A stretch of 62,629 nucleotides of DNA from positions 4,014,423 through 4,077,051 of the forward strand of contig NC_069006.1 of the NCBI RefSeq assembly GCF_001194135.2, in the 5' to 3' direction. Position numbers and translations under genes: made by a program. Under the pieces are notes generated by a model that did no database searches, had not been told where the DNA came from, and was given only the letters and a program-made list of their open reading frames with translations. The number at the start of each line of letters is the position of its first letter. Position 1 is the stretch's first letter. Origin of the DNA: Octopus bimaculoides (taxonomy: Eukaryota). Below are positions 3,499 to 57,329 of this stretch, piece after piece.

Positions 3499-3615
3499 GA
3501 GCTGCAACCTTTGCCGGATTACGGAAATATGTGGCTGAACAACGAATCACACGTGTTTTAAGCTTCATCCATATTGCTGCACAGGGACTGGCTGCGTCCG
3601 GATGCGCGGGTGGTG
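3499..3615 (+). CDS. Amidohydrolase internal exon A ([39 protein letters not shown])
   Basis: Polypyrimidine acceptor tccgtctcctctttctag| and donor G|gtaagt; phase 1-1. The peptide follows the family DAGSAG motif position. Confidence 0.85.
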
Positions 3616-4767: not shown

Positions 4768-7700
4768 CACACTCACCCACCCACATCCACATTTGTACTC
4801 ATATCACATATATATATATATACATATATATACATATGAGATATGAGTACAAATGTGTAAATGTGTGTGTGCGTGTGTGTGTGTGTGTGTGCGTGTGTGT
4901 GTGTGTGTGCGTGTGTGTGTGTGTGTATAGGCGCAGGAGTGGCTGTGTGGTAAATAGCTTACATGGCTTCGTGGCACCTTGGGCAAATGTTTTCTACTAT
5001 AGCCTCGGGTCGACCAAAGCCTTGTGAGTGGATTTGGTAGACGGAAACTGAAAGAATCCCGTCGTATATATATATATATATATGTGTGTGTGTTTGTCCC
5101 CCACCATCGCTTGTCAACCGATGTTGGTGTATTTACTTCCCCGTAACTTAGCGGTTCGGGTAAAAGAGGCCGATAAAATAAGTACTAGACTTACAAAGAC
5201 TAAGTCCTGGGTTCGATTTGTTCGACTAAAGGTGGTGCTCCAGCATGGCCGCAGTCAAATGATTGAAACACATAAAAGAATANNNNNNNNNNNNNNNNNN
5301 NNNNNNNNNNNNNNNNNNNNNNNNNNNNNNNNNNNNNNNNNNNNNNNNNNNNNNNNNNNNNNNNNNNNNNNNNNNNNNNNNNNNNNNNNNNNNNNNNNNN
5401 NNNNNNNNNNNNNNNNNNNNNNNNNNNNNNNNNNNNNNNNNNNNNNNNNNNNNNNNNNNNNNNNNNNNNNNNNNNNNNNNNNNNNNNNNNNNNNNNNNNN
5501 NNNNNNNNNNNNNNNNNNNNNNNNNNNNNNNNNNNNNNNNNNNNNNNNNNNNNNNNNNNNNNNNNNNNNNNNNNNNNNNNNNNNNNNNNNNNNNNNNNNN
5601 NNNNNNNNNNNNNNNNNNNNNNNNNNNNNNNNNNNNNNNNNNNNNNNNNNNNNNNNNNNNNNNNNNNNNNNNNNNNNNNNNNNNNNNNNNNNNNNNNNNN
5701 NNNNNNNNNNNNNNNNNNNNNNNNNNNNNNNNNNNNNNNNNNNNNNNNNNNNNNNNNNNNNNNNNNNNNNNNNNNNNNNNNNNNNNNNNNGCGGCGAATG
5801 TGACTCCTTGAACGTGGTCGACGTAGATGGATGCGTTTCGTGCATTCGGAAGAACCGTGACATGGTAGTCGGAGTTAAAGTCCGCTTGAGCTCCACTGTG
5901 GCCGACGATGGACGGAACGAAGAAGAAATATATCGGTAAAGAGTCTTTGTCATTTTAATGTTTTACTGTTTAATTTATTGTTTTTCTCTCCAGTTTCGGC
6001 TTTGTTTTCTGTAGTCTGAGCCCTACCGAATGCATTATTGCTCACAAAAAAAAAAAAAAAAAATTGCTGGCGTTTCTTTTGTAGTCATATCAGTCACTCC
6101 ACTGAAAGAATTTCTGTTACACCTCCTTTGACGGTGTTATTTACAACTACCGTATTTGAAGGGATAAAAGATGGCACTTGTATTAATAGACGTGCTACGA
6201 TTTATACATGACATGCTTCTTTTAGTTCTACTCTCAAAGCTTTGGTCATCCCGGGGTTATAGTAGAAGACACTTGCTCAAGGTGCCATGTAGTGAAACTG
6301 AACCCCAAAAGCATGTGGATGGGAAAGCAAGTCTAAAATGATTATTTTTTCCCATGCGGGGAGTCGAACCCCGGCCGCTGCGATGAGAACGTAGAATCTT
6401 AACCACTATTAACGAAAATAAATATTTATGTACACAGCTGCATGCATTTAAATTTAGCTCCCCTTTTTTAAAACACTACCCACTCGGATTACAATAGAAG
6501 CAGAAGAGCGGAAAAATGAGAGGAATTTTGGATGATTGGTGCCGTAGTATGAAAGTTAAAGAGATTTATAGTGTAATAGGAGTAGTTGTAGTGACAGCGC
6601 GATATGATCCGGATTTATAGGAATCCACGAAAACTAGGCTAATGGATGAAAAAAGATAAAAACAAGAAATAAAGGCAAGATGAATGGACGAGGGAACAAA
6701 TCCGTGGTGTTAGTGGTTTGGAGAATAGGGAAACAGTGAAGAGTAGAAGAAAGATATAGATAATAAGGGAAAAGTAAAAGAATATAAAAGGAGGGGATGG
6801 AATGACAGAAAAGAATGAAATAGTTGATGGAGACAGGAAAGGAAGGAAGAAATGTATAAATAAATGAGGAGAAATAGGGAGTAAGTTTTATTTAGCACTT
6901 ACTGGAAAAGAAGGAAGCTATTTCGATGAAGTGAGATAAGCAGACACAATAAGATAATCTGGAGTAGGAGAAGGAAATATAAGAATATACTACTTAACAA
7001 CGGTGGCTACTTTTGACTGAAAACGTATATTTTCATACAAGATAATGGACGCGGGCAGATTGACTGGGCAGACGACAACAGAAGGGAAAAGTAGTTTACT
7101 GATTTTTTTAAAAATATCATTTTTAATTTTTAAAATCATATAAACCCCCTCCTGTTTTGTGATTGGCAAATGGTTTGGCTCAGTGAGTTGGATTCTTATC
7201 TTCAGCAGTTTTATCCAAATAAATCTAGCTTTAAAAAAAGAGAGAAAAAGACAGAAGCAAAGCTGTACAGATGTTTCATATGCACCGAAACGAACGTATA
7301 TATGAAGAAGAATTAATTTTGTTGTTTATTATTTGTATCTATTCAAACTGAGAAATTTTCATTTCATTTCGCAGCTTGATGTCATGTTCGGTTGCCAATA
7401 TGTGGAAAAACAACGTTTGTTATGGCAAAGCAAAACGTAAGGATGCGTGTAAATGTGTGTGATGTGTGATATGAATGTGTCTAATGTAGGTGCGTAAGGA
7501 ATTGTATGTAGATGGAGTGTGTATGTGTGAGTGCGCCTGTGCAATGTCCGTTGTGCGTGTAATATGAGAGCATTGTTGTCATGTGTGTATATAATGTTTC
7601 TCATACGTTACACTCTATATAGTACACAAACATTTTACACGTATGTCGTGAGTTTGTAAGTTCGTGTCTGTCACTAAGCCTTGTACTGCGGTCTTTCATT

Positions 7701-9924
7701 GAAACTGAAGGGTCATACCAAACTAATGATGGTTATGTGCGTTGGGAAACAGTAAAGATGTTCAGATTTTTACTAAATTATTTTACAGAGAAGAAAAGAA
7801 TTCCTCTCTCCCTTGCTTCCTTCTTTCCTCCCCCTTCCTTCTTTCCTCCCCCCTTCCTTCTTTCCTCCCCCCTTCCTTACTGCCTGCCTACCTGCTTGTC
7901 CGCCTGTCTTCCTCTATTCTTTCCAAAAACATTTACCAATCACAAAACAGGAGAGGGGGTATATATAATTTTAAACGCTGCTGGACATCTACCACTGAGG
8001 AACCCATAGCAGGGTGAAATCACGTGACCTGGCAGTTCTGGCAGTCGACGTAGACGGTTCTCGTCTTTAACGATATAATTTCGAGGGCTTTTATGCACCA
8101 CAAGTCCCGATGAGAGATTCTCCATGTTAAGTTGGAGGTCAAGATTACCTTACGATGTGAACAATTCATCTTTTCTTTCCAACGAATCCGTTTATGTCCG
8201 AAACAACGTAAATTTCCTTTTCCTCACAGCAAAATAGTTTATTCCACCCGACATGTAAACTTAAATGTGACCAAAACAACGACGCCTCCCTCCCCCTCTC
8301 TCTGTCTCTCTCTCACTTGACGTAGTGATATAACTTGGCTGTAAATATATACCTTGGGGTACGAACGACTCATTGTTCTAAGTGGCTGCAGTACTATGAG
8401 ATTCCCAAATATCATAGTTAGTTTGTAATGGCCAGCTCAACTCCTGAACGACTGCAGATACTTATTTCCAGGGCAGTCTCTAAAAAAAGAATCGCTTCTG
8501 TGGAAATATGCTGTCTTTGTTTTAATCAGTTTTGAAACTAATGAAAAATTTTACTAAAATAACGTCCTTATTAAGATGGCGCTTCGGAATATAAATTGAC
8601 ATGAAGTTTTTGGTGGAAAGTTCTAATTTGGATCACTTTAATGCTTTTGTTACTATATTTCTGTTGAAATATACTGTCTTTACTCTTTTACTTGTTTCAG
8701 TCATTTGACTGCAGCCAGGCTGGAGCACCGCCTTTAGTCGAGCAAATCGACCCTAGGACTTATTCTTTGTAAGCCTAGTACTTATTCTATCGGTCTCTTT
8801 TGCCGAACCGCTAAGTTACAGGGACGTAAACACACCAGCATCGGTTGTCAAGCGATGGTGGGGGGACAAACACAGACACACAAACACACATACATATATA
8901 TGTATATATGTATATATATATATATACATATATACGACAGGCTTCTTTCAGTTTCCGTCTACCAAATCCACTCACATGGCTTTGGTCGGCCCGAGGCTAT
9001 AGTAGAAGACACTTGCCCGAGGTACCACGCAGTGGGACTGAACCCGGAACCATGTGGTTGGTAAGCAAGCTACTTACCACACAGCCACACCTGCGCCTAT
9101 TTGAATTTATTTTGAAAACAATGAAGAATTTGGTAGAAAAATTTGTCGATATCAAGATGATGTTTCGGATCCTAATTTAATATGAAAATTTGATGAAAGG
9201 TTTTTTAGATCACTTTAAAACTTTTGTTACCATATTTCTTCTGCTGAAATACACTGTCTCTGTTTCAATTTGAAAATAATGAAGAATTTAGTAAAATATC
9301 ATAAATTGACATGAAATTTTGATGGAAGGTTTTGCTTTAGAACATTTTAAATCCTTTTATCGTATTTCTATTGAAATAGAGAGCTTTTGTTTCATTTTGA
9401 TCTGAAACAAATAACGAATTTAGTCAAATTACTTTGCTGTCATTAAGCTGGTGTTTTGAAACAGAATTTAACATAGAATTTTGCTGCTCTCTCTCTATAT
9501 ACATTGTAAAGCGTGACTGGAGAAATAACTCTACAAACCAACTAACCAACCAAATACCCAACATTTATATCGACTATTATTATATAGAGATAGCGTATTT
9601 GCTTTTACTCCACACGAGAGTTGTAAATGTCCTACGAGTTTTTGAAGTCGCCATGATGGTTCGGAATAAATAAATTAGGTTGAAATGTATAAACCCTCAG
9701 GGAGTAAGTAATATTATATAAATTTATGTTTTTTTTTTGTATCGTGAATGTTTTTTCCTGCCGATTGGTGTTGGTATTTGCATAGCAGTGGTGTCGTTGT
9801 CATCGTAAATGCCACCACCACCACCACCACCACCACTATCTCTACTACTACTACTATCAAAACCATCACCTCTATTATTACCATTGCTGTTACTACCACC
9901 ACCACCACCACCACCATCATCACA

Positions 9925-9982
<58 letters not shown>

Positions 9983-10484
9983 TTGCCGTGGCCGTCACCT
10001 CCACCATCACCATCATCCGACATTATTTACGAGGAGGGGTCGAAAGTTTCATGGTGTAGCAGGGCTTCTTCACTAATGCTCGTTTCCCCCCCCCCCATTG
10101 TTCCATCATCCTAACCCACCATGTAAACATGTTTTTCTCTCTCTCTCCACCTGACAAACAGACAGACTGCGCTGTCCCCGCTGCCACCACCACAAACTTC
10201 AACCAATTCTCTCTGCCAGCGCGAAACACGTCAATCACTTCCTCAATCGGCTGTCATGGTAACATATCCACTGAACAACTTCATTATTTGGTTCATTCTT
10301 GTACTTTCCATAGTCTTTGTTTATATATATACATAGATATACATACGTTCATACATACACACATACACATATATATGCATATCTATATGTATTATGTATG
10401 CATACACACACACGCGCACACATATATGAGTGTATGTATGTACATGTATATGAATATGTATATAGGTATAAGTACATATATATG

Positions 10485-10575
<91 letters not shown>

Positions 10576-10927
10576 GTATGTTATGTATGCATAGACATAC
10601 GTATATATGTGTGTAGTATATATATATATATGTGTATATTATATAAGCATAACTACACATATATGCATATATATATTTACATACATTTATAACATAATAT
10701 ACATAATACACACGCATATATATTGCACTTGTTGATTTTTAGTTATAGAAAAGAGATTTCCGCTAATTTCCTCGTATCTATCTATCTGCCTATCTCTGTC
10801 TCTCTCTATCTATCTATCTATCTGCTTATCTATCTATCTATCTATCTATCTATCTGTCTGTCTGTCTGTCTGTCTTTCTGTGTCTGCAAGCCTGCCTGCC
10901 TGCCTATCTATCTATCTATCTATCTGC

Positions 10928-10975
<48 letters not shown>

Positions 10976-12844
10976 TTATCGATCGATTGATCGCTTTCTC
11001 CATCGTTCTTCCTCGTTTCTGTCCAAGCAGTCGCTCTCCATCAGCCCCCCCCCCCTCTTACGTTTTTCATTTCCTCACCCTACTTCTCTCTTACTCTCGC
11101 ATTCTCTTGTCTAACTCTATATATCTCTCTTGGTTCACCATTGTTGTCCTTTTGTTATTAAAATGAAATGCGTTTCTTTCAATTCGAAACAAAAAGTACT
11201 CCCGAAATAGAGAAATGTTTGCTGAGTGGAAAGCATTATTGTCTTTCTTCAATGCGTTGAATTCTTTCCTCCCTCCCTCCCTCTCTTTCCCCTCTCCTTC
11301 ACTAATAGCCGCCCATCCACTTTAATCTTCTAAAATGTCCCACAATGCTTCGCGATGTAAAGCTGGCAACAATGGCCGACTGACAACCATTGCTTACTGT
11401 ATAGACGCACACACACACACACACACACACACGCACGTACACACACCCGTACTTATACACACAAACACAAACACACTGCAATTATATAGAGGCGCGCAGG
11501 CACACACAAACACACACACTCACTCACTAGCAATTAGACACGCACACGCATACACACACACATAAATATGGCTTCTTTGTTGTTAGAAGATGATTGGCTT
11601 AATATTACAATGGTGGCGGCGGCGCAACGATGCCGTGTCAGCAGTGACGGCGACGATGCGGATGCTAGTTCGTGGCACAGTAACGTTTAGTTGTCTGGTG
11701 ATGGTGCAGTGTTGAACGTTTCTGCTGTTGCTGTTGATATTGACGGAGGAAAGGGAGGAGTAGCTATCTATGCCACTAGTAGTTGTAGTAGTAGTGGTAG
11801 ATGGTAATGGTGGTGGTGGTAGGAGTAGTAGAAATAAGAGAGTTCCATTTACGGCAAGAGACCCATTGATCCCGAATCAGAAAAGAAACAATGGACGTTA
11901 CTGTTGCGCCGTCTTCCTCCAGCTACAACTCTTCTTTCTTCGCAACTTCATCCCCACCACCACCACCACCACCATCATCATCAACAACACGCTTTCTTCT
12001 CCTCTTCCCCTCTTACCTCTCCCGAACATCTACTTCCGCTACCTATCCCCACCCATAGTCTTTTCAGTCGCCGTTGGAAACAGACTCAAGAAAATAAATT
12101 GGTTCTATGAAATCACCGAACACATAACACACACACACACACACACACATGCATAAACGCACATACACGCGCACACATACAGGCACATTTACACACACAT
12201 AGGCATAGAACACACACACTTGCATACACACACATGCACACATACATAGATAAACGCGTGCACACACACACATACGATAACGCACGTACATCGATCTGTT
12301 TGAAAAACGTTCGGCAAACCTCACTCTTATATACGTATACGTGATTATTAAAACACGCACACACACACACACACTAGCACACTAACACATGCACATGTGT
12401 ACTCTTGAATTTTTATAAACAATAGGTAAAACGTACTTTATACTGAGATACTCGTTATAATGCTCAGATGAGTCTTTCTTGTCTCTTTTAATACTTCGAG
12501 TTGGCTGATCGTAAAGTCAGGTAAGGGACAACAATGGACAAATGTTTCATTTGAATGTTACTTCGTCAAAACAGCACAGCCAATCTACTAATTCTGCTGG
12601 CTCGGTTAGACTGTACCATACTGACGAGGTAAATATATACCGAAACATACGTTCACAATCGTTCCTTGTCTGTGAACAAAGCACTATTATGGTTGCAGGC
12701 TGTGTATTTAAGAAGGTTTCGAGTTCTGTCCCACTGCACGACACCACGAGCAAGTGTCTTCTACTGTAGCCTCAGAGCAACCAATGCCTTGTCAGTGAAT
12801 TTGGTACATGGAAACTGTGCGGAAATCTGCGATATATATGTATG

Positions 12845-12880
<36 letters not shown>

Positions 12881-14150: not shown

Positions 14151-14192
<42 letters not shown>

Positions 14193-14982: not shown

Positions 14983-15025
<43 letters not shown>

Positions 15026-17870: not shown

Positions 17871-17904
<34 letters not shown>

Positions 17905-18433
17905 ATACACATACACACACACACGTATACATGCATTTTCACAAACATACACATATACATTCACATTCACACACTCATATACACAAACACATTCACACGC
18001 TTATACATATAAACATACGCATGTAGACACACATGTAAACGGACACACAAATACACATAAGCAATTCGGTCAAGCAGAACCAAAATGGCTGAAACTACAA
18101 GTTTTATGCTGTGCTTCCGGAATTGGACAGCTTTCTTCCGTGCATTACAATAAATGAGCGCGCATATATATATATATATGAACTATTTACTGCTTTGATG
18201 TAAAAGAGCAACCGGTCTGAGAGAGATATGAATAACTGATTCTGTGTCCGTAACGAGCCAGAAACACATGCGTCCTACGGTCCGACAACGTCGTTCGTTG
18301 CCTAATGACGTGTCCTCACACATATTGTCTGTGGAGAGAATTTTTTTTCCCTGAGAATGTTTCTGCAGCGAAAGGTCTTTCCACGTTCGAGTGAAAATGA
18401 ATGTAACAAATATGAATGTACAAACATATACAC

Positions 18434-43329: not shown

Positions 43330-43380
<51 letters not shown>

Positions 43381-44522: not shown

Positions 44523-44568
<46 letters not shown>

Positions 44569-46507: not shown

Positions 46508-46540
<33 letters not shown>

Positions 46541-46623
46541 ATATAATATAAATAATATATAAATATATGCATATATCCATACATATATGTACATACCTAC
46601 ACCTATATGTGTATATGAATATG

Positions 46624-46688
<65 letters not shown>

Positions 46689-48584: not shown

Positions 48585-48654
<70 letters not shown>

Positions 48655-48989
48655 GTCTGTCTATCTGTCTGTCTGTCTGCTTCACTATATTTCTCTCTCT
48701 ATTATACTACGTTCTTTAAATGGGTTTCCACCATCTTTCCAGAGATATATTTCCTGGATATTTCAGTTCATGATTTTCGTAAATAACTCTTATTTTTTGC
48801 TGAAAGCTTTTCCTCAAATGCGAGAATGTGAGCTTGGTTTCCGCTGTACGTTCACAGCATTTTACTCACTTGTGGGGGGAAAAAACCCCAACAAAACACA
48901 CACACACACAAACTAACATAGAAAATATCGAATTTGCTTTTCAGCCATCCAGCGTCAATAAAAATACCAGTAATCTGCGGTGTGTTAAA

Positions 48990-49039
<50 letters not shown>

Positions 49040-49063
49040 TACATAAATGTATATATGCATTGC

Positions 49064-49103
<40 letters not shown>

Positions 49104-49115
49104 CANNNNNNNNNN

Positions 49116-49147
<32 letters not shown>

Positions 49148-49358
49148 CAAATAATAAATGAGTATATGCATATATACGTACCTGTATGTACATACCTACA
49201 TCTACCTGTATATATAGATGCATATCTGGGTACAGGACGTTGCAAAAAAACGTAGAATATATATATACATATGCAATGCATATATACGTTTATGCATGTG
49301 TGTGTATATACTCATATATACCATATATGCACACATATAAAATGTATATTTATATCTC

Positions 49359-49399
<41 letters not shown>

Positions 49400-52300
49400 C
49401 TTGTACATATGTATGTACGTATATAAACAAGAAGACTGACAGATAGAGACAGCAACGACCACACACACATACCTCTACAAAAGAGTGACTTAATCAAAAA
49501 GATTAAACATTTCCCAGAGTGCACCGAACATTTCTGGTTGGGTGGGCTCTTGCAATTCCTCCCTTATTTACTTAAATATGCTAATGACTTCCATTATACT
49601 GCTGTTTCTCTCTTTCGATATATGTTATAACCTTTTGTTGCGGATCCCTGTTATCTAAAGTGCGTGACATATAGGGGACAAAACATCGACTGATCACTAG
49701 CACATAACTTCACTTCCAATACCGCCATCACCATCATCACTACCAGAATCAGCACCACTGACGCTTCAACCATTTCAGTCCCCCCCCCCCATAAATTATA
49801 GCCTTTGCTACATCGCAAAGTCCTTCCTTTCCGCCGCCGCCGCCTCAGCTTCCTCCACCGCCACCGACGTCTGCCACCACTAACATCGTCATCCTACGCT
49901 TCCTCATCGTCGTCGTCATCATCATCATCATCGGTGTCGTCGTCATCGTCGACGTCGCCATTATTATCATCATTTTCATCATCATCATCATCGTCATCAT
50001 CCACAACATTGTTGCCGTAGTCGTTATTATCAACATCACATTCATCGTCCAACCAACAGCCACATCACCAAATTGATATATCTGAACACTCTCTAGTTGT
50101 GAGGGATATTTCGGTGGTCTCCCAGTTGAATCTCAAATTACTATTTTCACACAACGACAATCATTCATTCAGGTTTACGGAACATTTTTTTTTTCATCAA
50201 ATATTTACAAAACGTTACCAGAGCAAAGACAAGTGAGCGGATCCTAGATCTGGTAGTCAATCGATGTATATTCAGATGATGATGATGATGATGTTAATGG
50301 CGGTGTTATTATGTGTTTACATTTATGCTCTCCCCCACCTGATCTAAGCCCAATGGAGACATTCCATTCCGTTCCATCTTCCTCGCAATACTTTTCGTCA
50401 TAACCGTAGCAACACTGTCCCGTAATCCCCAGCCCCTTTGTACGATCTGTGGACTGCTTTGCAGATCCTTAGCGGAATTGAAATGTCAAACCCGGCTTAA
50501 ACAATCAAGCTGAATAAACTGAGTAGGTTGTTGGATCCTCTCGTACGTCGGAACCGACGACAGAGTCCGCCATCAGCCATCATATACATACATACGTACG
50601 TACATACATACATACATACATACATACATGCAGATAGATAGGCATATAAATATGTGTGTGTGTGTGTGTGTGTGTAATAGAAATAGGTTTCAAAGAAAAA
50701 AGAGAAAATGCTCATTGGATATAAAAAATAAAGGCTTTTTTATGAAACGTAAAGATATGTATATATATATATATATATATATNNNNNNNNNNNNNNNNNN
50801 NNNNNNNNNNNNNNNNNNNNNNNNNNNNNNNNNNNNNNNNNNNNNNNNNNNNNNNNNNNNNNNNNNNNNNNNNNNNNNNNNNNNNNNNNNNNNNNNNNNN
50901 NNNNNNNNNNNNNNNNNNNNNNNNNNNNNNNNNNNNNNNNNNNNNNNNNNNNNNNNNNNNNNNNNNNNNNNNNNNNNNNNNNNNNNNNNNNNNNNNNNNN
51001 NNNNNNNNNNNNNNNNNNNNNNNNNNNNNNNNNNNNNNNNNNNNNNNNNNNNNNNNNNNNNNNNNNNNNNNNNNNNNNNNNNNNNNNNNNNNNNNNNNNN
51101 NNNNNNNNNNNNNNNNNNNNNNNNNNNNNNNNNNNNNNNNNNNNNNNNNNNAGTGCAAACACGCGAACTACTTCGTCCCTACTTTCAAGTTCGTGCCTCA
51201 CAGCGTTCATACACACATAATTTTTCTCGTCTGGCCGTAAAGCCTTTTCTCTTTGTTTTCCTGTCTTGTTTTTTGTCCGCCACTACATTCCTCCATGGCA
51301 AGATTTAATTTGTGTATACAAATTTAATTTGCTGTCCATGGGAAGAGCCGTTTTAACGACGGGCTTATTTCAGTTTCCGTCTACCAAATCCGCTCATAAG
51401 GCTTTGGTCGGCCCGAGGCTATAGCAGAAGACACTTGTCCAAGTTGCCACGCAGTGGGACTGGACCCAGAACCATGTGGTTGGTAAGCCACTCCTGAGCC
51501 TACATGATAATATATCAATATAATATATAAAAATTATAACAGGAGTTTTTTCGACATCGCATGGCTATGAGAGACCTCGCTCTTGAGGAAAAGAGAAATC
51601 AAAGGGGTTAATAGATAAAAAACAGTTGAGAACTACTGAGAAGTTTTTGCCTTTCTTCTTCAGTCCTAATCCTCTAACACAACAACCTTCGTTTAGAGAA
51701 CTTTCATCCCACCAAATCATCCCTCAACTTCAATTCGGGCCCCAAATGTCTCACTCTTTTACAAAGAACCAGAGCGACGAATCGTGATATTCTGCAATCC
51801 TAATGGATAAATAAACGTTATCAATCCAACTGAAATCTGAAATGACTAATCTAGTATTTTCGGACACAGATCAACGCCACTTCTCTTGGATTGCAGATAT
51901 TACTGCATTTTAACGTGTATAAGGAACCCCCTAATTTTAGGGTCTTAAAATTTGGAAAAAAAGGTTTTGTAAGGGATTATAATACTATCCATGTATAAGA
52001 AACTCCCATGTTTTTTAACCTAATTTTTGACAAAAAAGGGTTCCTTATACATGTTAAAATTTGGTACTCTATTTTAACATTATGTTAATGATATCTATCT
52101 GTCGGTCTCTATCAATCATTCAATCTCTCTCTAAATGTCTGTCTGTCTCTGTCTCCCCCTCTCTCCCTTTTTCTTTCTCTTATATTTAGATGTCTGTCTG
52201 TCTCCCTCTCTCTCTTATATATATAGATATTTGCATGTTTGATTGTGTGTGCGTGTGTTTGTGTTTGTGTGTCTCATGTGGATTTTTACTTGTGTGCAGG

Positions 52301-52944
52301 AACATAAACAGTTAACTATCAAGCGAGTGTGTATGTGTTTAATTTTTGTAATGGGAACTCACCAAAGAAGCTGGGCTGGTTTATTTATGTTACAAGAGGA
52401 AGGAAATGACAACGAAATCCAGCAGTGAGTTTATCTCTGATTAAGCAGACGACCGCCCGGCTAACTTCCCGTTAAATAAGGATATAACGTTCATTTGACC
52501 TTTGCTGTCAAGTAGAATTCCCTCCACTTTTCGCTTGTCTGTTCGGCGGGAATCAATTACCGGAAACGAGAGCCGTTACTGAGCTGTAGAAATGCCGATG
52601 ATATAAGGGACCTATATCTAACTTCATTCTTATCGTGTTTATCTGATTTATCAGATGTAAACAAGTAACACGTCTTTTTGTCTTTCCATATGTGAACATC
52701 GTCTATCTGACACATCTGTCTGTCAGAGTAGTTTTGCCTCAGTGAGTATTCATGTGAAATAAGTATATATAGGTCGCGGTCTCAAAGCGACGAAAACATT
52801 AATTAAATTTAAATGTTGAAGTGAATCTAACGGTTTTTGTGTGTTTCTTAAATAGCTTATAAACACCTTCCACGCTGCAGTTATTTTCGTTCGAGCACAC
52901 GATCTCAGATCAGGTCACTTGCTATGCAAGTACATCTCCGTAAT

Positions 52945-53022
<78 letters not shown>

Positions 53023-56000
53023 NNNNNNNNNNNNNNNNNNNNNNNNNNNNNNNNNNNNNNNNNNNNNNNNNNNNNNNNNNNNNNNNNNNNNNNNNNNNNN
53101 NNNNNNNNNNNNNNNNNNNNNNNNNNNNNNNNNNNNNNNNNNNNNNNNNNNNNNNNNNNNNNNNNNNNNNNNNNNNNNNNNNNNNNNNNNNNNNNNNNNN
53201 NNNNNNNNNNNNNNNNNNNNNNNNNNNNNNNNNNNNNNNNNNNNNNNNNNNNNNNNNNNNNNNNNNNNNNNNNNNNNNNNNNNNNNNNNNNNNNNNNNNN
53301 NNNNNNNNNNNNNNNNNNNNNNNNNNNNNNNNNNNNNNNNNNNNNNNNNNNNNNNNNNNNNNNNNNNNNNNNNNNNNNNNNNNNNNNNNNNNNNNNNNNN
53401 NNNNNNNNNNNNNNNNNNNNNNNNNNNNNNNNNNNNNNNNNNNNNNTATATGTATAGCAAAATTTAGATTCAGATGAATATGCTACTTAAGTTACAGAAT
53501 TTAGTACGGTATTATCCATACAATTTCAAAGTAAGGTGATTAAAATCAAAATAAGCAACAAGGATATCCAGATTATATATATATATCGAACATTGTAAAT
53601 ATAATCCAATTTTTATTGTATATTTAAAATTGTAAATATTTAATCGATACAGCTACTTCACCCCTTTTATGTTTGTCTGTCCTTGTTCGTCCCGTCTTTG
53701 TAGTGCCTTTATGGCAAATATTTATGAAATAAAGTAGCTTGCTTACCAACCACATGGTTCCGGGTTCAGTCCCATTGCGTGGCATCTTGGGCAAGTGTCT
53801 TCTACTATAGCCTCGGGCCGACCAAAGTTTTGTGAGTGGATTTGGTAGAAGGAAATTGAAAGAAGCCCGTTGTATATATGTATATATATATATGTGTGTG
53901 TGTGTGTTTGTGTGTCTGTGTTTGTCCCCCTAGCATTGCTTGACAACCGATGCTGGTGTGTTTATGTCCCTGTTACGAAGCGGTTCGGCAAAAGAGACCG
54001 ATAGAATAAGTACTAGGCTTACAAAGAATAAGTCCCGTGTTCGATTTGCTCGACTAAAGGCGGTGCTCCAGCATGGCCGCAGTCAAATGACTGAAACAAG
54101 TAAAAGAGTAAAAGAGTACACCAAGAATTTGTCTTATGGTATGAGATTATCTCCCCTCCTCAAGCGGAGCTGCTCTCAACTGCTATTTGGTAATTTGAAG
54201 ATATCAAGAGCTTATGTTGTATATTATTTAATACACCTGTATTGTCTATGTTCTTCATGTACATGTCACTGGCCATCCTGCGTAATTACTCATACTCCAT
54301 TCCTTCTACTTCATACTATCCATGCTTCACAACACCACCGGGTCTACAAAATTCAACCGTTACTAATGGTTATACACTTATTTATAGAGAGTTTTGTAAT
54401 AAACTGTTATATTTTGTGGTTTAAATTCCTTTCTATTCTTCCATTTTTTTGTTTCTTTGACAGGAGAGCACTAGATGCATCAAATCAGGTTGCTGTACCT
54501 CTGATGGTTCACCACACTATCTCAAGTATCCCCGTTGTTGGTTCAGGTGAGTTTCATCCGTCAACATTAAATATTACTTGATACTTTAACTCGATGGGTT
54601 TTGGAAATAGCAGCCAAATCTCTCTCCAATTACAGGCGTGGCAATGTGGTTAAGAAGCTTGGTTCCCAAACTACATGGTCTTTGGTTCAGTCCTACGAGT
54701 GTCTTCTTTTATATCTCCTGATCAACCAAAGTTTTATGAGTGGATTTGGTAGACGAAATCAGATAGGGGCCGGTCGTGTGTGTGTATGTATATATACACA
54801 TACACATATACATATGTGTGTGTGTGTGTGTGTGTATTCCTTTGTGTTTGTATTTATCACCCACCATCGTTTGACATCCGGGGTTGGTTTGTTTCCGTTT
54901 CCGTAATTTATCAGTTCAGCAAAAGTGACTGACAGAATAACTATCAGGCTTAAAAAAAAAAAATACTGGGTCCATTGGTTCGACTAAACCCTTCAAGGTA
55001 GTGCCCAAACATGGCCGCAGTCCAAGGACTAATATAAGTAAAATGAAAGGAAAAAAGGGCTTTTGAAAAGAGAGAGAAGCATTAAGAAATCTAGTGTTTG
55101 ATACAGAATACCTGGACAATGGGCAGTGTAGCCATGGCTGAAGTACGTTTGACCATAGACCTGCTCAGACAAAGCCGATCTGGGGCCAAACATCGTGAAA
55201 GACAAGTCGTGGAACGGTGGTACAAAGCTTTCATCGTTAAACCGATTTCAATTCCTACTCCCTGATACGTTACTTCATTAATGCTTTTAGTGCTCCTCAG
55301 CAGTGATTCCTGATGGGCCGGGGGCTTTCCCTGACTTCATATCCTTAATTGCTTTATCTAGCAGGGTACTGTCGATTCAGGTAACTAGTCCCTCAATTGG
55401 ATCAACATTTGGCAGGCTCTCCTCCTCCCATTCTTTCTTCACATTCAGCAGTCTTTCATAATGGCATCTCCAAGCCTCTTTCTTTGCAGAATAAGACGAG
55501 GGGTGTTTTTTATCACTTCTCCATGAGTGAGGTTCTCACGTGGTAAATTACTCAGTATTCTATATTCTGACATAACATCCACATTTAAGTGGGGGATAAA
55601 TATTTAATATCAATACTGCTTCTCTCACTGTTATGTCCCGCATTATGACAACGTATTTCATCGTTTCTGCGGGACTGGCCCGAACAGCATACTTCGCTGA
55701 CTGACACTACCATCTATTGGTAGTGGGTTAGTCCACTTCTCACCTAGGGGCGTCCGCCACAACAGTCACTAATACTCTTTTACTCTTTTACTTCTTTCAG
55801 TCATTTGGCTGTGGCCATGCTGGAGCACCGCCTTTAGTCGAGCAAATCGACCCCAGGACTTATTCTTTGGATGCTTAGTACTTATTCTATCGGTCTCTTT
55901 TGCTGAACCGCTAAGTCACGGGGACGTAAACATACCAGCATCGGTTGTCAAGCGATGTTGGCGGGGTGGTGGGGAGACACAAACACAGACACACACNNNN

Positions 56001-57329
56001 NNNNNNNNNNNNNNNNNNNNNNNNNNNNNNNNNNNNNNNNNNNNNNNNNNNNNNNNNNNNNNNNNNNNNNNNNNNNNNNNNNNNNNNNNNNNNNNNNNNN
56101 NNNNNNNNNNNNNNNNNNNNNNNNNNNNNNNNNNNNNNNNNNNNNATATATATATATATATATATATACAACGGGCTTCTTTCAGTTTCCTTCTACCAAA
56201 TCCACTCACAAGGCTTTGGTAGGCCCGAGGCTATAGTAGAAGACACTTGCCCAAGGTTCCACGCAGTGGGAATGAACCTGGAACCATGTGGTTGGTAAGC
56301 AAGTTACTTAATAATAATTTTTTTTTAAATCTCTGTCACTATTTGCCACACCCGTGCCAGAATAGACACTGAGGTTTTAAGTATATCGCAGACGGTGGAA
56401 TTACTGCTACCTCAAGCCACGGATGTCTGCTGTTGACAAAGCCAAGGCCAGCGGCTGTAGCGGGCAGTTATCTCCCACTAGCGATATAAGTACCAGTAAT
56501 TATTTGCCCCACAAGTTCATAAGCGAGGTTCTCTCATGGCAAATAACACAGCATCATGTATTCTAATGCATCATCCACTTTTAAGCGGGATAAATATTAC
56601 CTTTTGGTATTAATACTGCTTCTGTCATTATTAATTATCCTGCAAAATCTTTGTGATAAGCGAACGATGTTACTGATTATCTTTATTTATTTTTCAGATA
56701 ACAAACTCAGCTGCCCCGGGGATTTACGTTGCGGAGATATTTACACGCACACCTATCACGGTCTACCCAGTACCATCATTGATGAAAAATCTGGCAACAT
56801 TCATTCTACGCTGTGGGATGCCAGGAAACGTGGCGTATTCTTTGATGTTGGTCACGGAGAAGGTTCGTTTACTTGGACTGTAGCTGAAATATGCGCCCAG
56901 AACGGTTTTTGGCCCGACATTATAAGCACCGACCTCCACAGCGGAAACACTGACGGACCTGCTTATGATTTGGTCACTGTTATGTCCAAGTTTCTTCACC
57001 TGGGTATGAGTATAGCCGATATTGTAAAGGCTGTTACTGAAACTCCAGCTCGTGCCATTCAGAAATCGGAAGATATTGGGAAGTTAGCGATTGGGCGAGA
57101 GGCTGATGTGACTGTGCTGAGAATCGAAGAGTGTGATGTAACCATGGAAGACAGCTATGGACAACAGAGACGCATCCGACAGAGAATCATTCCGGTGGCG
57201 GTTTTCAGGGCAGGAAAACTATACGAGGTTCGAACTCCCGATGTCTGGCCAAATATTGAGAAGGCTAAATTGCTGTCAGCTGGATGGAACGAGCTTGTCA
57301 TAAAGGACAAAGAAAAACCCCATTTTTAG
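3499..57329 (+). CDS. Spliced gene, 5'-partial: join(3499..3615,5791..5935,54464..54546,56698..57329). Metal-dependent amidohydrolase, dihydroorotase-like deacetylase (COG3964/Atu3266-like family)
   Basis: Exon phases chain 1-1, 1-2, 2-1, 1-stop (117+145+83+632 nt). The joined frame is open: [12 protein letters not shown]...GGGGECDSLN...VVGVKVRLS...YRRALDAS...PLMVHH...[10 protein letters not shown]...[13 protein letters not shown]...PDIISTDLH...GREADVTVL...KPHF*. Motifs fit the amidohydrolase TIM barrel: Lys in GVKVR, His in LMVHH and YTH, Asp in STDLH. Family assignment is from motif recall, not a database search. Confidence 0.88.
4222..4333. repeat. 37-bp tandem repeat, 2 full copies plus a partial one
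   Basis: CAAATGACTGAAGAGTAACTATCGAAATGACTGAAGA starts at 4222, 4259 and 4296. Confidence 0.9.
4929..5282 (+). mobile_element. SINE family 1 copy (tRNA head, CORE-like body, internal (TA)n/(TG)n, conserved 3' half)
   Basis: Head AGGCGCAGGAGTGGCTGTGTGG, body GACCAAAGCCTTGTGAGTGGATTTGGTAGACGGAAACTG, tail CAGCATGGCCGCAGTCAAATGA. More than 12 homologous copies lie in the window. Confidence 0.9.
5791..5935 (+). CDS. Amidohydrolase internal exon B ([48 protein letters not shown])
   Basis: Carries the GVKVR motif. Donor CG|gtaaag, phase 2. The acceptor is hidden in the N-gap ending at 5790, but G+GC gives the expected phase. Confidence 0.85.
6349..6408 (-). pseudogene. tRNA-Glu(CTC)-like pseudogene or fragment lacking a proper 5' acceptor strand
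   Basis: Reverse complement TAGTGGTTAAGATTCTACGTTCTCATCGCAGCGGCCGGGGTTCGACTCCCCGCATGGGAA parallels eukaryotic tRNA-Glu (CTC anticodon loop, GGTTCGA T-loop). The 5' end has decayed. Confidence 0.6.
7129..7975. repeat. About 50-bp inverted repeat pair (7129-7178 and 7923-7975) containing CCAAT and TATA-like motifs
   Basis: TTTAAAATCATATAAACCCCCTCCTGTTTTGTGATTGGCAAATGGTTTGG versus reverse complement TTTAAAATTATATATACCCCCTCTCCTGTTTTGTGATTGGTAAATGTTTTTGG. Confidence 0.75.
8530..9480. repeat. Degenerate AT-rich tandem array with a unit of about 150-157 bp, split by a SINE
   Basis: TTTGAAA(A/C)(T/C)AATGAA...GATCACTTTAA...TTTTGTTAC..TATTTCT..TGAAATA.ACTGTCT recurs near 8531, 9112 and 9269, with a partial unit near 9402. 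Confidence 0.65.
8682..9098 (-). mobile_element. SINE family 1, full-length copy
   Basis: Reverse complement of the full consensus, including the internal microsatellite. Confidence 0.9.
12958..12999 (+). ncRNA. Minimal type I hammerhead-ribozyme-like motif (probably inactive; Penelope-type)
   Basis: TTACAG-TTGAAAA-GATC(TCAAG)GATC-GAAA-CCGG-T-G-CTGTAA: perfect 6-bp stem I, 4-bp stem II, palindromic ACCGGT stem III, U3-A8 in place of C3-G8, and G at position 17. Confidence 0.5.
13434..13475. repeat. Perfect 42-bp palindrome
   Basis: CACATCGACTCCATT-ATATATATATAT-AATGGAGTCGATGTG. Confidence 0.95.
13760..14060 (-). mobile_element. Possible decayed non-LTR RT fragment (R4/Dong-like)
   Basis: Translation ...[14 protein letters not shown]... 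resembles the HP(K/R)SSVERLYLPRxxGGRG motif. It is frameshifted and rests on a single motif. Confidence 0.3.
15548..16420 (+). mobile_element. Internally deleted Tc1/mariner transposon, DD37D (maT-type) transposase pseudogene
   Basis: N-terminal [11 protein letters not shown]...[11 protein letters not shown] is fused to [19 protein letters not shown]...[11 protein letters not shown]...[10 protein letters not shown]. There are 37 residues between the second and third catalytic positions, plus stops and frameshifts. 3' end ...GACAATTCATTCACCATATCCTG|TA; partial 5' TIR AATTGTCACC. Confidence 0.85.
17060..17810. repeat. Long pyrimidine-rich (CT) low-complexity tract
   Basis: Direct inspection. 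Similar purine/pyrimidine tracts lie at 6620-6990, 27860-28180 and 32200-32700. Confidence 0.85.
18701..19066 (+). mobile_element. SINE family 1, near full-length copy
   Basis: A-box-like TGGCTGTGTGG, B-box-like GGTTCAGTCCC, internal (TA)(TG)n, conserved tail. Confidence 0.9.
19069..19277. mobile_element. Foldback or MITE-like element with perfect 58-bp inverted arms and a 93-bp spacer
   Basis: 19069-19126 (ATATATATAAAATATATAGTTTTAGGGAAAATAACCAAGTTTCAAGAACTCATCGATG) is the exact reverse complement of 19220-19277. Confidence 0.8.
21353..21660 (-). mobile_element. Retroposon family 2 copy with a (GAT)n 3' tail (RTE-like 3' end or SINE)
   Basis: CATCATCGTTTAACGTCCGCTTTCCATGCTAGCATG...GGATGC(C/T)CTTCCTAACGCCAACCACTC. 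Homologous copies at 22790-23120 (opposite strand), 25870-26218 and 35611-35791. Confidence 0.8.
21997..22403 (+). mobile_element. SINE family 1, full-length copy with an (AGTAAAG)n tail
   Basis: Matches the in-window consensus. Confidence 0.9.
22790..23120 (+). mobile_element. Retroposon family 2 copy
   Basis: Ends GGAAAGCGGACGTTAAACGATGATGATGATG; reverse complement of 21353-21660. Confidence 0.8.
23132..23810 (-). mobile_element. Cluster of SINE family 3 copies interleaved with (GAT)n/(TAA)n
   Basis: Repeated ATCGACCCC..AAAGGATGAAAGGCAAAGTTGACCTCGG.GGAATTTGAACTCAGAAC. Head (reverse complement) GGCGAGCTGGCAGAATCGTTAG with B-box-like GAGTTCAAATTCC. Confidence 0.8.
25741..25869 (+). mobile_element. 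3' half of a mariner-derived MITE (5' part lies in the gap)
   Basis: Diverged copy of 26312-26441. Confidence 0.7.
25870..26218 (-). mobile_element. Retroposon family 2 copy
   Basis: Homologous to 21353-21660. Confidence 0.8.
26221..26441 (+). mobile_element. Mariner-derived MITE, about 220 bp, with TIRs of about 30 bp and TA target duplication
   Basis: 5' TACGAGGGGGCACTGAAAAGTTCCTGGCTTT; 3' reverse complement TACGAGGGGGTGCTGAAAAATTCTTGGCTTT. The internal remnant [20 protein letters not shown] matches a mariner transposase C-terminus. Confidence 0.88.
30013..30426 (-). mobile_element. SINE family 1, full-length copy
   Basis: Reverse complement of the consensus. Confidence 0.9.
30812..32202 (+). 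mobile_element. SINE family 1 copy whose internal microsatellite spans an assembly gap
   Basis: Head and core at 30812-31001, N-gap, then the 3' half at 31962-32202. Confidence 0.85.
32756..32958 (+). mobile_element. Tx1/L1-type LINE ORF2 C-terminal fragment (zf-RVT region), running into a gap
   Basis: GC-rich island translating ...[29 protein letters not shown], which fits the W..(..)LP....L.RHG.....CP pattern of L1/Tx1 ORF2 ends. Confidence 0.65.
35611..35791 (-). mobile_element. Retroposon family 2, 3' fragment
   Basis: Homologous to 21353-21530. Confidence 0.8.
37330..37885. repeat. Unclassified interspersed repeat of about 550 bp
   Basis: Bounded by (ATT)n. A diverged copy of its first ~75 bp lies at 38763-38838. 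Confidence 0.5.
37920..38229 (-). mobile_element. 5'-truncated R4/Dong-clade non-LTR retrotransposon 3' end (restriction-like endonuclease C-terminus) inserted in (TAA)n
   Basis: Open frame 38229->38017: [70 protein letters not shown]. (ATT)n arrays flank both sides. Confidence 0.8.
38271..38744 (+). mobile_element. Two tandem SINE family 3 copies separated by (ATT)n
   Basis: Heads at 38271 and 38551 (GAGCTGGCAGAAT); tails ...AGTAGAAAGGATTATT. Confidence 0.82.
39520..40320. repeat. About 26-bp minisatellite (CATTCCTCCACTCAACTCACACTTGA)n with a 133-bp higher-order duplication
   Basis: Roughly 30 degenerate units; the variant block CACTCTACATTCTTCCACTCAACATTCC.. starts at both 39891 and 40024. 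Confidence 0.9.
41891..42129 (-). mobile_element. Fragment encoding two C2H2 zinc fingers, most likely an RTE-type LINE ORF2 3' end
   Basis: [22 protein letters not shown] and [21 protein letters not shown], both C-x2-C-x12-H-x3-H. No TGEKP linker; cut off upstream by (TA)n. Confidence 0.6.
42395..43250 (-). mobile_element. Decayed Penelope-like element, RT fragment
   Basis: Interrupted translation [17 protein letters not shown]...FYRDD...RKRNIWFNP...NVATNI...[14 protein letters not shown] fits Penelope RT motifs FDVTMGSYDGAEVCELVG, GLYRDD, RNIIWFNPP and KIFNRNTVKVSYSC. Confidence 0.75.
44270..44478 (-). mobile_element. SINE family 3 copy
   Basis: Matches the family 3 consensus. Further fragments lie at 26530-26760, 36440-36540, 37095-37240, 43900-44110 and 62180-62350. 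Confidence 0.8.
45518..45850 (-). mobile_element. Diverged SINE family 1 relative
   Basis: Recognisable tail TTACTTGTTTCAGTCATTG..CTGCAGCCATGCTGGAGCAC and head GGGACTGAACCCG. Confidence 0.7.
47177..47457. mobile_element. 281-bp foldback MITE (Mutator/MULE-like) with a 9-bp TSD and internal telomeric-repeat arms
   Basis: Both ends read GGTACTACTAAAG inward. The TSD CAGAAGTTT lies at 47168-47176 and 47458-47466. The arms continue into (CCCTAA)n on the left and (TTAGGG)n on the right around a spacer of about 25 bp. Confidence 0.9.
47602..47614 (+). promoter_or_regulatory. CTCF-like core motif CCACTAGATGGCA
   Basis: Matches the CCASYAGRKGGCR consensus; motif only. Confidence 0.35.
51362..51499 (-). 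mobile_element. SINE family 1, head and core fragment
   Basis: Reverse complement of the 5' half. Confidence 0.8.
53732..54118 (+). mobile_element. SINE family 1 copy upstream of exon C
   Basis: Matches the consensus; it accounts for the N-terminus of the track ORF 53940..54581. Confidence 0.88.
54464..54546 (+). CDS. Amidohydrolase internal exon C ([27 protein letters not shown])
   Basis: Acceptor tttttttgtttctttgacag|, donor CAG|gtgagt. Phase 2-1 bridges exon B and the last exon exactly. PLMVHH metal-ligand motif. Confidence 0.87.
54632..55045 (+). mobile_element. Diverged SINE family 1 copy
   Basis: Head AGGCGTGGCAATGTGG, core GTGGATTTGGTAGACG, internal (TG)n, tail. Confidence 0.75.
55290..55490 (-). 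mobile_element. RTE-type LINE fragment, N-terminal to the RT
   Basis: [17 protein letters not shown]...[27 protein letters not shown], containing the typical KAPGPxGI.AE motif, with an internal stop. Confidence 0.75.
55772..56309 (-). mobile_element. SINE family 1 copy with a gap in the internal microsatellite
   Basis: Reverse-complement tail at 55772-55996, N-gap, head at 56146-56309. Confidence 0.87.
56698..57329 (+). CDS. Amidohydrolase terminal coding exon (about 210 aa, C-terminal half of the barrel)
   Basis: Acceptor ctttatttatttttcag|, phase 1. Motifs [39 protein letters not shown] stop at 57327-57329. Confidence 0.92.

What the first reader, a model, noticed from the sequence alone, without database searches (positions are those of the whole stretch)
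3499..57329. Intron-containing, bacterial-type COG3964-like amidohydrolase in a cephalopod-like genome
Seen: four phase-consistent exons embedded in host repeats encode a TIM-barrel metallohydrolase with GVKVR, PLMVHH, GDIYTH, FDVGHG and STDLH motifs. Established knowledge: this motif set marks the mis-annotated 'dihydroorotase' deacetylase family (Atu3266/EF_0837-like), which I know mainly from bacteria and which is distinct from the animal CAD dihydroorotase domain. Inference: either an old, domesticated horizontal transfer or a patchily retained gene, giving an uncharacterised animal deacetylase or amidase activity.
Basis: partly seen in the sequence, partly recalled or inferred. Interest (0 to 1): 0.78.

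Follow-up and report, generated by a model that had tools for sequence, protein, structure and literature searches.

The report
Octopus COG3964 amidohydrolase gene, 3′ half
The window holds the last four exons of a real Octopus bimaculoides gene, already annotated, for a bacterial-type metal-dependent deacetylase/amidase; animals, sponges and choanoflagellates share it, so it is an old inherited gene and not a recent bacterial import.

Summary
All five motifs lie on the + strand in four GT-AG exons (3499-3615, 5791-5935, 54464-54546, 56698-57326; stop 57327-57329) with matching phases. The joined 324 aa match NCBIfam NF006689 at 3e-76 and the solved structures 2ICS, 8JE0, 8WZY and 2OGJ. One correction is needed. 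Gap 5283-5790 hides exon B's acceptor and its first 6 nt (two residues, Ala-Lys). Gap-free O. vulgaris shows this directly, and Argonauta and the RefSeq protein agree. The exons are residues 191-517 of XP_014790616.1/XP_052833023.1, "deacetylase EF_0837(-like)", Octopus bimaculoides. The gene and its family assignment are therefore already public. The N-terminal 190 aa, including the HxH motif, lie outside the window. Named homologues occur across molluscs, a brachiopod, a nemertean, an annelid, cnidarians, sponges and two choanoflagellates. They form one clan in NJ trees (bootstrap 64-96%). All four Octopus introns are shared in position and phase with Haliotis and Nematostella, and one is also shared with two sponges. 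dN/dS among cephalopods is 0.07-0.09, and the metal ligands are invariant. A recent transfer, contamination and a pseudogene are all excluded. A very ancient prokaryotic origin remains possible. The substrate is unknown.

The parts
3499..3615 (+). Exon A (117 nt; residues 191-230 of XP_014790616.1; begins with 2 nt of a split Gly codon, ends in phase 1)
   Evidence: Acceptor ctag|, donor |gtaagt. tblastn gives 100% identity over the exon proper. The same 117-nt exon is present in Haliotis, Nematostella, Sycon and Corticium.
5283..5790 (.). Assembly gap that hides the acceptor site and the first 6 nt (Ala-Lys) of exon B
   Evidence: RefSeq protein reads GGAKGGECD against GGGGECD for the direct join. 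O. vulgaris reads ttttag|CAAAAGGCGGCG and Argonauta reads cacag|GAAAAGGAGGAG.
5791..5935 (+). Visible part of exon B; contains GVKVR, whose Lys (5877-5879, K261) aligns with the carboxylated bridging Lys of the family
   Evidence: Donor |gtaaag, ends in phase 2. K261 is invariant in all 164 aligned sequences.
5936..54463 (+). 48.5-kb intron full of SINE-like dispersed repeats, microsatellites and 13 assembly gaps; no further coding exon
   Evidence: Self-BLAST repeats and ORF list. The orthologous intron is 43.4 kb in gap-free O. vulgaris and 15.2 kb in Argonauta, with no extra exon. This intron position (phase 2, EEIYR|RAL) is shared by all five animals mapped.
54464..54546 (+). Exon C (83 nt); PLMVHH with the beta-5 metal-ligand His (H296, 54510-54512)
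   Evidence: Acceptor gacag|, donor |gtgagt. H296 is invariant.
56698..57329 (+). Exon D (last coding exon, 629 nt plus TAG stop); GDIYTH (H325, 56748-56750), FDVGHG (H360), STDLH (D386, 56931-56933) and the C-terminal composite beta domain
   Evidence: Acceptor ttcag|. 100% tblastn identity over the exon proper. H325 and D386 are invariant. Pfam EF_0837-like_N hit at residues 244-290 of the joined peptide.
57602..57607 (+). AATAAA, candidate polyadenylation signal 273 nt after the stop (unverified)
   Evidence: Pattern search; no transcript data were available.

Best explanation
The finding is the 3' part (residues 191-517, four exons) of a genuine, selectively maintained nuclear gene of Octopus bimaculoides. 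RefSeq already annotates it as 'deacetylase EF_0837(-like)'. It belongs to the COG3964 / PRK09237 branch of the amidohydrolase superfamily. The fold is a (beta/alpha)8 barrel with a binuclear metal site: HxH (outside the window), a bridging Lys in GVKVR, His in MVHH, His in YTH and Asp in STDLH. A small composite beta domain is built from the N- and C-termini. Shown here: the gene structure, the family, the conserved ligands, purifying selection, and orthologues with shared introns in molluscs and cnidarians and, for one intron, in sponges. Orthologues were also found in two choanoflagellates. The gene was therefore in the animal lineage before the last common ancestor of animals, and probably before the choanoflagellate-animal split. 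Cephalopods inherited it vertically. Inferred: it is a cytosolic metal-dependent hydrolase that cleaves an acetyl/acyl ester or amide on a small carboxylate-bearing molecule, like the characterised bacterial member Atu3266. The physiological substrate is unknown.
For: Motifs and GT-AG exons with consistent phases. NF006689 at 3e-76 for the window peptide and 4e-103 for the full protein. PDB 8JE0, 2OGJ, 2ICS and 8WZY at 2e-43 to 5e-53 over about 320-345 residues. 99-100% identity to XP_014790616.1/XP_052833023.1 of O. bimaculoides. Same exon structure in gap-free O. vulgaris and Argonauta. dN/dS of 0.086, 0.067 and 0.084. All metal ligands invariant in 48 named eukaryotic and 116 other sequences. 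Eukaryote clan with NJ bootstrap 96%, 72% and 64% as sampling grew, with choanoflagellates and sponges branching first. All four Octopus intron positions and phases shared with Haliotis and Nematostella, and the phase-2 intron in EEIYR|RAL shared with Sycon and Corticium too. Eukaryotic neighbours (Snf7, Fe-SOD) in Nematostella. Host SINE-like repeats and microsatellites fill the introns.
Against: No O. bimaculoides transcript could be retrieved, so splicing in this species rests on RefSeq's model, canonical sites and conservation. Trees are NJ with a simple distance, not ML, and support for the clan falls to 64% with the largest sampling. The choanoflagellate sequences are transcriptome contigs, so prey contamination is not formally excluded, although they fall inside the eukaryote clan. 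The full Octopus protein scores 344.9 against NF006689, below the equivalog cut-off of 371. No activity is known for any animal member. Bacterial gene neighbourhoods gave no consistent substrate clue.
Confidence: 0.9

Rival explanations
1. Very ancient horizontal transfer: a prokaryotic COG3964 gene entered the nuclear genome of a holozoan (or earlier eukaryotic) ancestor, gained introns, and was then inherited vertically and lost in several animal lineages. This concerns ultimate origin only and is compatible with the best explanation.
For: The family is otherwise prokaryotic in what was sampled: 67 bacterial and archaeal loci, with Bathyarchaeota and actinobacteria as the outgroups. Named eukaryotic hits were only choanoflagellates and animals, apart from one unnamed eukaryote-like contig (L078). 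No fungal, plant, vertebrate or arthropod protein was among the best 120 of either search. Identity between eukaryotes and the closest marine or uncultured bacteria (about 49%) is almost as high as inside the eukaryote clan (50-53%).
Against: In the outgroup-rooted NJ tree the eukaryote clade is sister to the close bacterial clade, not nested in it, so the direction is unresolved. Only the best 120 hits per search could be seen, so absence from other eukaryotes is not shown. A metagenome contig carrying a clan member next to IPP-2, a family I know only from eukaryotes, points to at least one more microbial eukaryote. This fits a wider, older eukaryotic distribution with losses.
Confidence: 0.45
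2. Recent horizontal transfer from bacteria into cephalopods or molluscs, later domesticated with introns.
For: Family known mainly from bacteria; about 50% identity to bacterial MAG proteins.
Against: Orthologues in sponges, cnidarians, a brachiopod, a nemertean, an annelid and choanoflagellates form one clan. All four intron positions and phases are shared with a cnidarian, and one with sponges.
Confidence: 0.01
3. Bacterial contamination or a chimeric scaffold: the exon-like blocks are bacterial fragments wrongly joined across gaps.
For: 18 N gaps in the window, one of them abutting exon B.
Against: Canonical GT-AG introns with polypyrimidine tracts. Octopus SINE-like repeats lie between the exons. 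The same four exons in the same order are present in gap-free chromosome-scale assemblies of O. vulgaris and Argonauta hians. The same protein is annotated in the second, chromosome-level O. bimaculoides assembly.
Confidence: 0.01
4. Decaying pseudogene or unexpressed relic.
For: Very long introns; no transcript of this species was retrieved here.
Against: Open frame through all four exons. dN/dS of 0.07-0.09 over 321-324 codons, with dS of 0.22 to O. vulgaris and about 2 to Argonauta. All catalytic ligands are intact. A 2-kb transcript-like Logan contig encodes a protein 64% identical to the Octopus and Argonauta proteins; I infer it comes from another cephalopod.
Confidence: 0.03

Closest known systems
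Atu3266 (PDB 2OGJ), Agrobacterium; COG3964 'incorrectly annotated dihydroorotase' (Ornelas et al. 2013, Biochemistry 52:228; cited in PMC12524618, paper itself not held)
   Same: Alignable over residues 135-473 at E = 8e-49. Same HxH / Lys / His / His / Asp ligand set. Same two-domain layout. From my own knowledge of that paper, it deacetylates acetyl-(R)-mandelate and some N-acetyl-D-amino acids.
   Different: Much lower similarity than to the closest bacterial relatives (43-49% identity). The Octopus gene has introns, and its annotated protein has an N-terminal insert of about 90 aa (outside the window). The substrate of the animal clade is untested.
EF_0837 (PDB 2ICS, deposited as 'adenine deaminase'), Enterococcus faecalis; TIGR03583
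   Same: E = 1.5e-45 over residues 146-484, including the C-terminal composite beta domain. Pfam EF_0837-like_N hit.
   Different: TIGR03583 scores 242 bits against a cut-off of 432, so this is a different subfamily.
PDB 8JE0 'Amidase' and 8WZY 'Dihydroorotase' (recent COG3964-type structures)
   Same: 8JE0 is the best PDB match (4.6e-53).
   Different: 8JE0 lacks the His of FDVGHG (it has FDCSNG) and differs around the PLMVHH strand. No paper on either entry was found in the library.
Closest bacterial homologues: 'amidohydrolase/deacetylase family metallohydrolase' of uncultured Acidobacteriota, Latescibacterota, Verrucomicrobiota, Planctomycetota, Lentisphaerales and Acidimicrobiia
   Same: 43-50% identity over the full length, same length and same ligands.
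   Different: Intronless. They sit in varied catabolic neighbourhoods (PhyH, GFO/IDH/MocA, sulfatase, M24, MR/MLE, BNR_2). In the NJ tree they form the sister clade to the eukaryotes.
Dihydroorotase domain of animal CAD / bacterial PyrC
   Same: Same superfamily (amidohydrolase TIM barrel with carboxylated Lys).
   Different: No dihydroorotase model is among the NCBIfam hits at E <= 0.01. The 'Dihydroorotase' labels on 2OGJ and 8WZY and on JGI proteins are the known misannotation.

Membership tests
COG3964 / NCBIfam NF006689 (PRK09237) amidohydrolase/deacetylase family metallohydrolase | Full-length match to the family HMM at or above the curated equivalog cut-off (371 bits) | tested here: inconclusive
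   Octopus full protein 344.9 bits (E = 4e-103, profile 23-371 of 383), Haliotis 364.5 and Sycon 340.5 are below the cut-off. Nematostella (377.9) and Diaphanoeca (375.8) are above it. The closest bacterial MAG protein (361.7) is also just below. Family-level homology is certain; strict equivalog status is borderline.
COG3964 / NCBIfam NF006689 (PRK09237) amidohydrolase/deacetylase family metallohydrolase | Binuclear-metal ligand set: HxH (strand 1), bridging Lys (strand 4), His (strand 5), His (strand 6), Asp (strand 8) | tested here: met
   H158 and H160 (outside the window), K261, H296, H325 and D386 are present in Octopus and are invariant or nearly so in 164 aligned sequences. They align with the same residues of 2ICS, 2OGJ and 8WZY.
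COG3964 / NCBIfam NF006689 (PRK09237) amidohydrolase/deacetylase family metallohydrolase | TIM barrel plus composite beta domain formed by the N- and C-termini | tested here: met
   Continuous alignments to four solved structures over about 320-345 residues. Pfam Amidohydro_1 scores 28.2 (cut-off 25). EF_0837-like_N scores 25.0 (cut-off 27, borderline). No structure prediction was run.
COG3964 / NCBIfam NF006689 (PRK09237) amidohydrolase/deacetylase family metallohydrolase | Deacetylase/esterase activity on acetylated alpha-hydroxy or D-amino acids | not testable with these tools
   Needs recombinant protein; the source paper (PMC3542638) is not held.
Dihydroorotase (PyrC / CAD DHOase domain) | Match to a dihydroorotase family model | tested here: not met
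   No dihydroorotase model among the 16 NCBIfam families at E <= 0.01.
Recent bacterium-to-animal horizontally transferred gene | Restricted to one animal lineage and nested among bacterial sequences; introns absent or lineage-specific | tested here: not met
   Present in 6 animal phyla and 2 choanoflagellates as one clan. Introns shared with a cnidarian and with sponges.

The most novel reading that the evidence does not exclude
The whole eukaryotic clade (choanoflagellates, animals and at least one unidentified microbial eukaryote) descends from one very old prokaryote-to-eukaryote transfer of a marine-bacterial catabolic deacetylase/amidase. Non-bilaterian animals and lophotrochozoans kept it under strong constraint. 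It was not seen in vertebrates or ecdysozoans here, so it may mark a small-molecule pathway of marine invertebrates that model animals lack.
Probability: 0.35. Interest if true: 0.45.

Novelty: already known. Interest (0 to 1): 0.25.

Why it matters
As a genome feature this is ordinary. It is an annotated protein-coding gene with very long, repeat-filled introns, as is typical of Octopus. Its residual interest is evolutionary and biochemical. A strongly conserved enzyme of a family studied only in bacteria appears to have been in the animal lineage since before sponges diverged, and it keeps about 50% identity to proteins of uncultured marine bacteria. No mention of any animal member turned up in the held literature by the terms searched. 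Finding its substrate would annotate dozens of invertebrate genes now named only by similarity ('deacetylase Atu3266/Oant_2987/EF_0837-like').

Tried and rejected
1. Looked for the missing N-terminal exons in 1-3498. tblastn with the full RefSeq protein found none. They lie upstream of the window, since the gene spans about 239 kb.

2. Tried to fetch the newer O. bimaculoides locus to fill the gap. P0001 is not on record, and P0121's gene range is too long to return DNA. O. vulgaris and Argonauta were used instead.

3. Literature. Searches for cog3964, Atu3266, EF_0837 and Oant_2987, and for the PDB codes, gave nothing on animal members. Ornelas 2013 is not held.

4. Substrate from bacterial context. 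The first two neighbourhoods (BNR_2 propellers, a DHDPS-family gene, GntR, aminotransferase) suggested a sialic-acid-like sugar-acid pathway. Clustering the neighbours of 46 genome loci showed no neighbour in more than 11 loci, and the set was mixed: PhyH 9, GFO/IDH/MocA 9, sulfatase 7, M24 7, MR/MLE 6, BNR_2 5. The idea is kept only as a weak lead.

5. Tested whether eukaryotes nest inside the close bacterial clade, which would give the transfer direction. In the outgroup-rooted NJ tree they are sister to it, so this is unresolved.

6. Rfam and tRNA scans of the window found nothing. No other long ORF in the window looks like a gene.

7. Structure prediction and fold search were not run. Sequence matches to four solved structures already settle the fold.

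Full report
**Observation**

They sit in four blocks bounded by canonical splice signals.
- Exon A is 3499-3615 (ctag| ... |gtaagt).
- Exon B is 5791-5935 (its 5' end runs into an N gap; donor |gtaaag).
- Exon C is 54464-54546 (gacag| ... |gtgagt).
- Exon D is 56698-57326, followed by TAG at 57327-57329 (acceptor ttcag|).

The phases match. B ends with CG and C begins with G, giving Arg. C ends with G and D begins with AT, giving Asp.

The joined 324-aa peptide matches NCBIfam NF006689 (PRK09237, "amidohydrolase/deacetylase family metallohydrolase") at 3e-76 over profile positions 98-371 of 383. It matches TIGR03583 (EF_0837) at 5e-54. It also matches the solved structures 2ICS, 8JE0, 8WZY and 2OGJ at 1e-32 to 6e-36. 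No dihydroorotase model appears among the hits. The observation and the family assignment are correct and far beyond chance.

**Gaps**

The window has 18 N runs. Only one touches coding sequence: 5283-5790 ends exactly where the readable part of exon B begins.

A direct join of A to B is in frame and reads CAGGGGECD. The RefSeq protein reads CAGGAKGGECD. In the gap-free O. vulgaris assembly exon B starts ttttag|CAAAAGGCGGCG, and in Argonauta hians it starts cacag|GAAAAGGAGGAG. The gap therefore hides the acceptor and 6 nt (Ala-Lys).

The remaining gaps inside the finding are intronic, and most abut (TA)n, (GT)n or (GA)n runs. O. vulgaris (L005) and Argonauta (L006) have no N runs. They carry the same four exons in the same order, orientation and phases, with no extra exon in the long intron. 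That intron is 48.5 kb here, 43.4 kb in O. vulgaris and 15.2 kb in Argonauta. The scaffold is therefore sound for this gene.

**Identity**

The best database hit is XP_014790616.1, "PREDICTED: deacetylase EF_0837-like [Octopus bimaculoides]". It is 517 aa, with 99% identity and 100% coverage. The only difference is the two hidden residues. The same 517-aa protein is XP_052833023.1 in the chromosome-level assembly GCA_001194135.2, where the gene spans about 239 kb.

The window encodes residues 191-517. The N-terminal 190 aa, including DCHVHAYQ (the HxH metal ligands), are not in 1-3498.

**Is it functional?**

Over 321-324 codons, dN/dS is 0.086 against O. vulgaris (dS 0.22). It is 0.067 against Argonauta, and 0.084 between O. 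vulgaris and Argonauta (dS about 2 for both Argonauta comparisons).

The amidohydrolase ligand set is intact in Octopus: H158, H160, K261 (GVKVR), H296 (MVHH), H325 (YTH) and D386 (STDLH). These residues are invariant or nearly so across 48 named eukaryotic and 116 other sequences.

An AATAAA lies 273 nt after the stop. No transcript of this species could be retrieved. A 2-kb transcript-like Logan contig does encode a protein 64% identical to the Octopus and Argonauta proteins; I infer it comes from another cephalopod.

**Distribution and history**

Named hits include:
- all major mollusc classes;
- Lingula, Lineus and Owenia;
- anthozoan cnidarians;
- sponges (Sycon, Corticium, Oscarella pearsei);
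- the choanoflagellates Diaphanoeca grandis and Salpingoeca urceolata.

In NJ trees (Kimura-corrected distances, about 412 columns) all named eukaryotes form one clan with no named bacterium inside.

| Tree | Sequences | Clan bootstrap |
|---|---|---|
| First | 120 | 96% |
| Extended | 164 | 72% |
| With outgroups | 228 | 64% |

In the extended tree the choanoflagellates branch first, then the sponges, then the eumetazoans. Shallow nodes follow taxonomy and the deep nodes are unresolved.

Intron mapping by exact spliced alignment on genomic loci of Haliotis, Nematostella, Sycon and Corticium gave two results. All four introns bounding the window's exons are shared in position and phase with Haliotis and Nematostella. 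The phase-2 intron in EEIYR|RAL is shared by all five species. In Nematostella the gene lies between Snf7 and Fe-SOD genes.

These results place the intron-bearing gene before the cnidarian-bilaterian split, and at least one of its introns before the sponge split. They exclude a cephalopod- or mollusc-specific transfer, contamination, and a chimeric assembly.

**Ultimate origin**

The closest prokaryotic relatives are 43-49% identical. All are from uncultured Acidobacteriota (including "Versatilivorator"), Latescibacterota, Verrucomicrobiota, Planctomycetota, Lentisphaerales, Acidimicrobiia and Gemmatimonadaceae.

Identity between eukaryotes and these bacteria (about 49%) is nearly as high as within the eukaryote clan (50-53%). 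The tree was rooted with Bathyarchaeota, Nocardiopsis-group actinobacteria and two distant paralogues (100% support). In it, the eukaryote clade is sister to one large multi-phylum bacterial clade and is not nested in it. The direction and timing of any transfer therefore remain open.

No fungal, plant, vertebrate or arthropod protein was among the best 120 of either search. Only the top 120 could be seen, so absence is not shown.

One clan member, P0182, lies on a 5.5-kb metagenome contig. Its neighbours are compact and apparently intronless, and they include IPP-2, a family I know only from eukaryotes. The eukaryotic range is therefore probably wider than Choanozoa. An ancient prokaryotic origin is plausible but unproven (I put it near 0.45).

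**Function**

The fold and the ligands indicate a binuclear-metal hydrolase. From my own knowledge of Ornelas et al. 2013 (cited in PMC12524618; the paper itself is not held), the only characterised relatives deacetylate acetyl-(R)-mandelate and some N-acetyl-D-amino acids. Their physiological substrates are unknown.

I tried to infer a substrate from bacterial neighbourhoods. Two metagenome contexts suggested sugar-acid or sialic-acid-like catabolism, with BNR_2, a DHDPS-family gene and GntR. Across 46 genome loci no neighbour recurs in more than 11. The recurrent ones are mixed: PhyH, GFO/IDH/MocA, sulfatase, M24/creatinase-like, MR/MLE, BNR_2, SDR and amidase.

The most likely mechanism is metal-activated hydrolysis of an acetyl/acyl ester or amide on a small carboxylate-bearing molecule. 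The substrate cannot be named.

**Verdict**

The family, the host and "old, patchily retained gene" are right. Any recent transfer is excluded, and the novelty was overstated because the gene is already in RefSeq under this name. Interest is low to moderate (0.25). What remains open is the enzyme's substrate and whether the eukaryotic clade began with a very old transfer.

Noticed in passing
window 8654-9097, 21997-22410 (-), 29995-30425, 53732-54120 (-), 4967-5282, 18782-19069, 31962-32213, 55772-55996, 30810-30999: A dispersed SINE-like repeat of about 400 bp, with at least 9 copies in both orientations at 84-96% identity. One copy runs into the gap before exon B, and one lies about 340 bp upstream of exon C. 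No tRNA or Rfam match.
   Followed up: partly
window 21353-21663, 22812-23129 (-), 25872-26192, 35599-35792: A second dispersed repeat family of about 310 bp at 87-94% identity.
   Followed up: no
window 39523-40209: Tandem array of a 26-nt unit (CTCCACTCAACTCACACTTAACATTC), 26 copies, 78% matches.
   Followed up: partly
window, all 18 N gaps: Most gaps are flanked on at least one side by (TA)n, (GT)n or (GA)n microsatellites. They look like assembly breaks in simple repeats rather than missing unique sequence.
   Followed up: partly
L003 (Sycon) and L004 (Corticium) versus window exon A, L001 and L002: The 117-nt exon equivalent to exon A has the same length in all five animals. In both sponges both of its borders lie 5 nt upstream (phase 2 instead of phase 1) relative to Octopus, Haliotis and Nematostella. 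This is a coordinated shift of two neighbouring introns.
   Followed up: no
P0001 residues ~50-140 (outside the window): The annotated Octopus protein has an extra low-complexity stretch of about 90 aa in the N-terminal beta domain that is absent from other animal orthologues (517 aa against about 420-430). It could be a real insert or a mis-called exon.
   Followed up: no
L078 (ENA metagenome contig, 5499 nt, 50% GC), gene at 533-2098: A 521-aa member of the eukaryote clan lies beside compact, apparently intronless genes, including IPP-2 (protein phosphatase inhibitor 2) and a fatty-acid hydroxylase. It probably comes from an unidentified microbial eukaryote.
   Followed up: partly
locus coordinates 172461-184906 on the - strand of the ~239-kb gene in GCA_001194135.2: An 815-aa gene with no Pfam hit is called on the opposite strand inside an upstream intron of the deacetylase gene. 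By coordinate arithmetic it lies just upstream of this window. O. vulgaris has an 844-aa gene on the - strand in a similar place (L005 1-1716).
   Followed up: no
L011-L075 (bacterial loci): In 9 of 46 loci a PhyH-family dioxygenase lies next to the amidohydrolase. In the representative locus, from the Terriglobia/Versatilivorator group, it is directly upstream on the opposite strand. In 7 loci an M24/creatinase-like peptidase lies next to it, directly downstream in the representative locus.
   Followed up: partly
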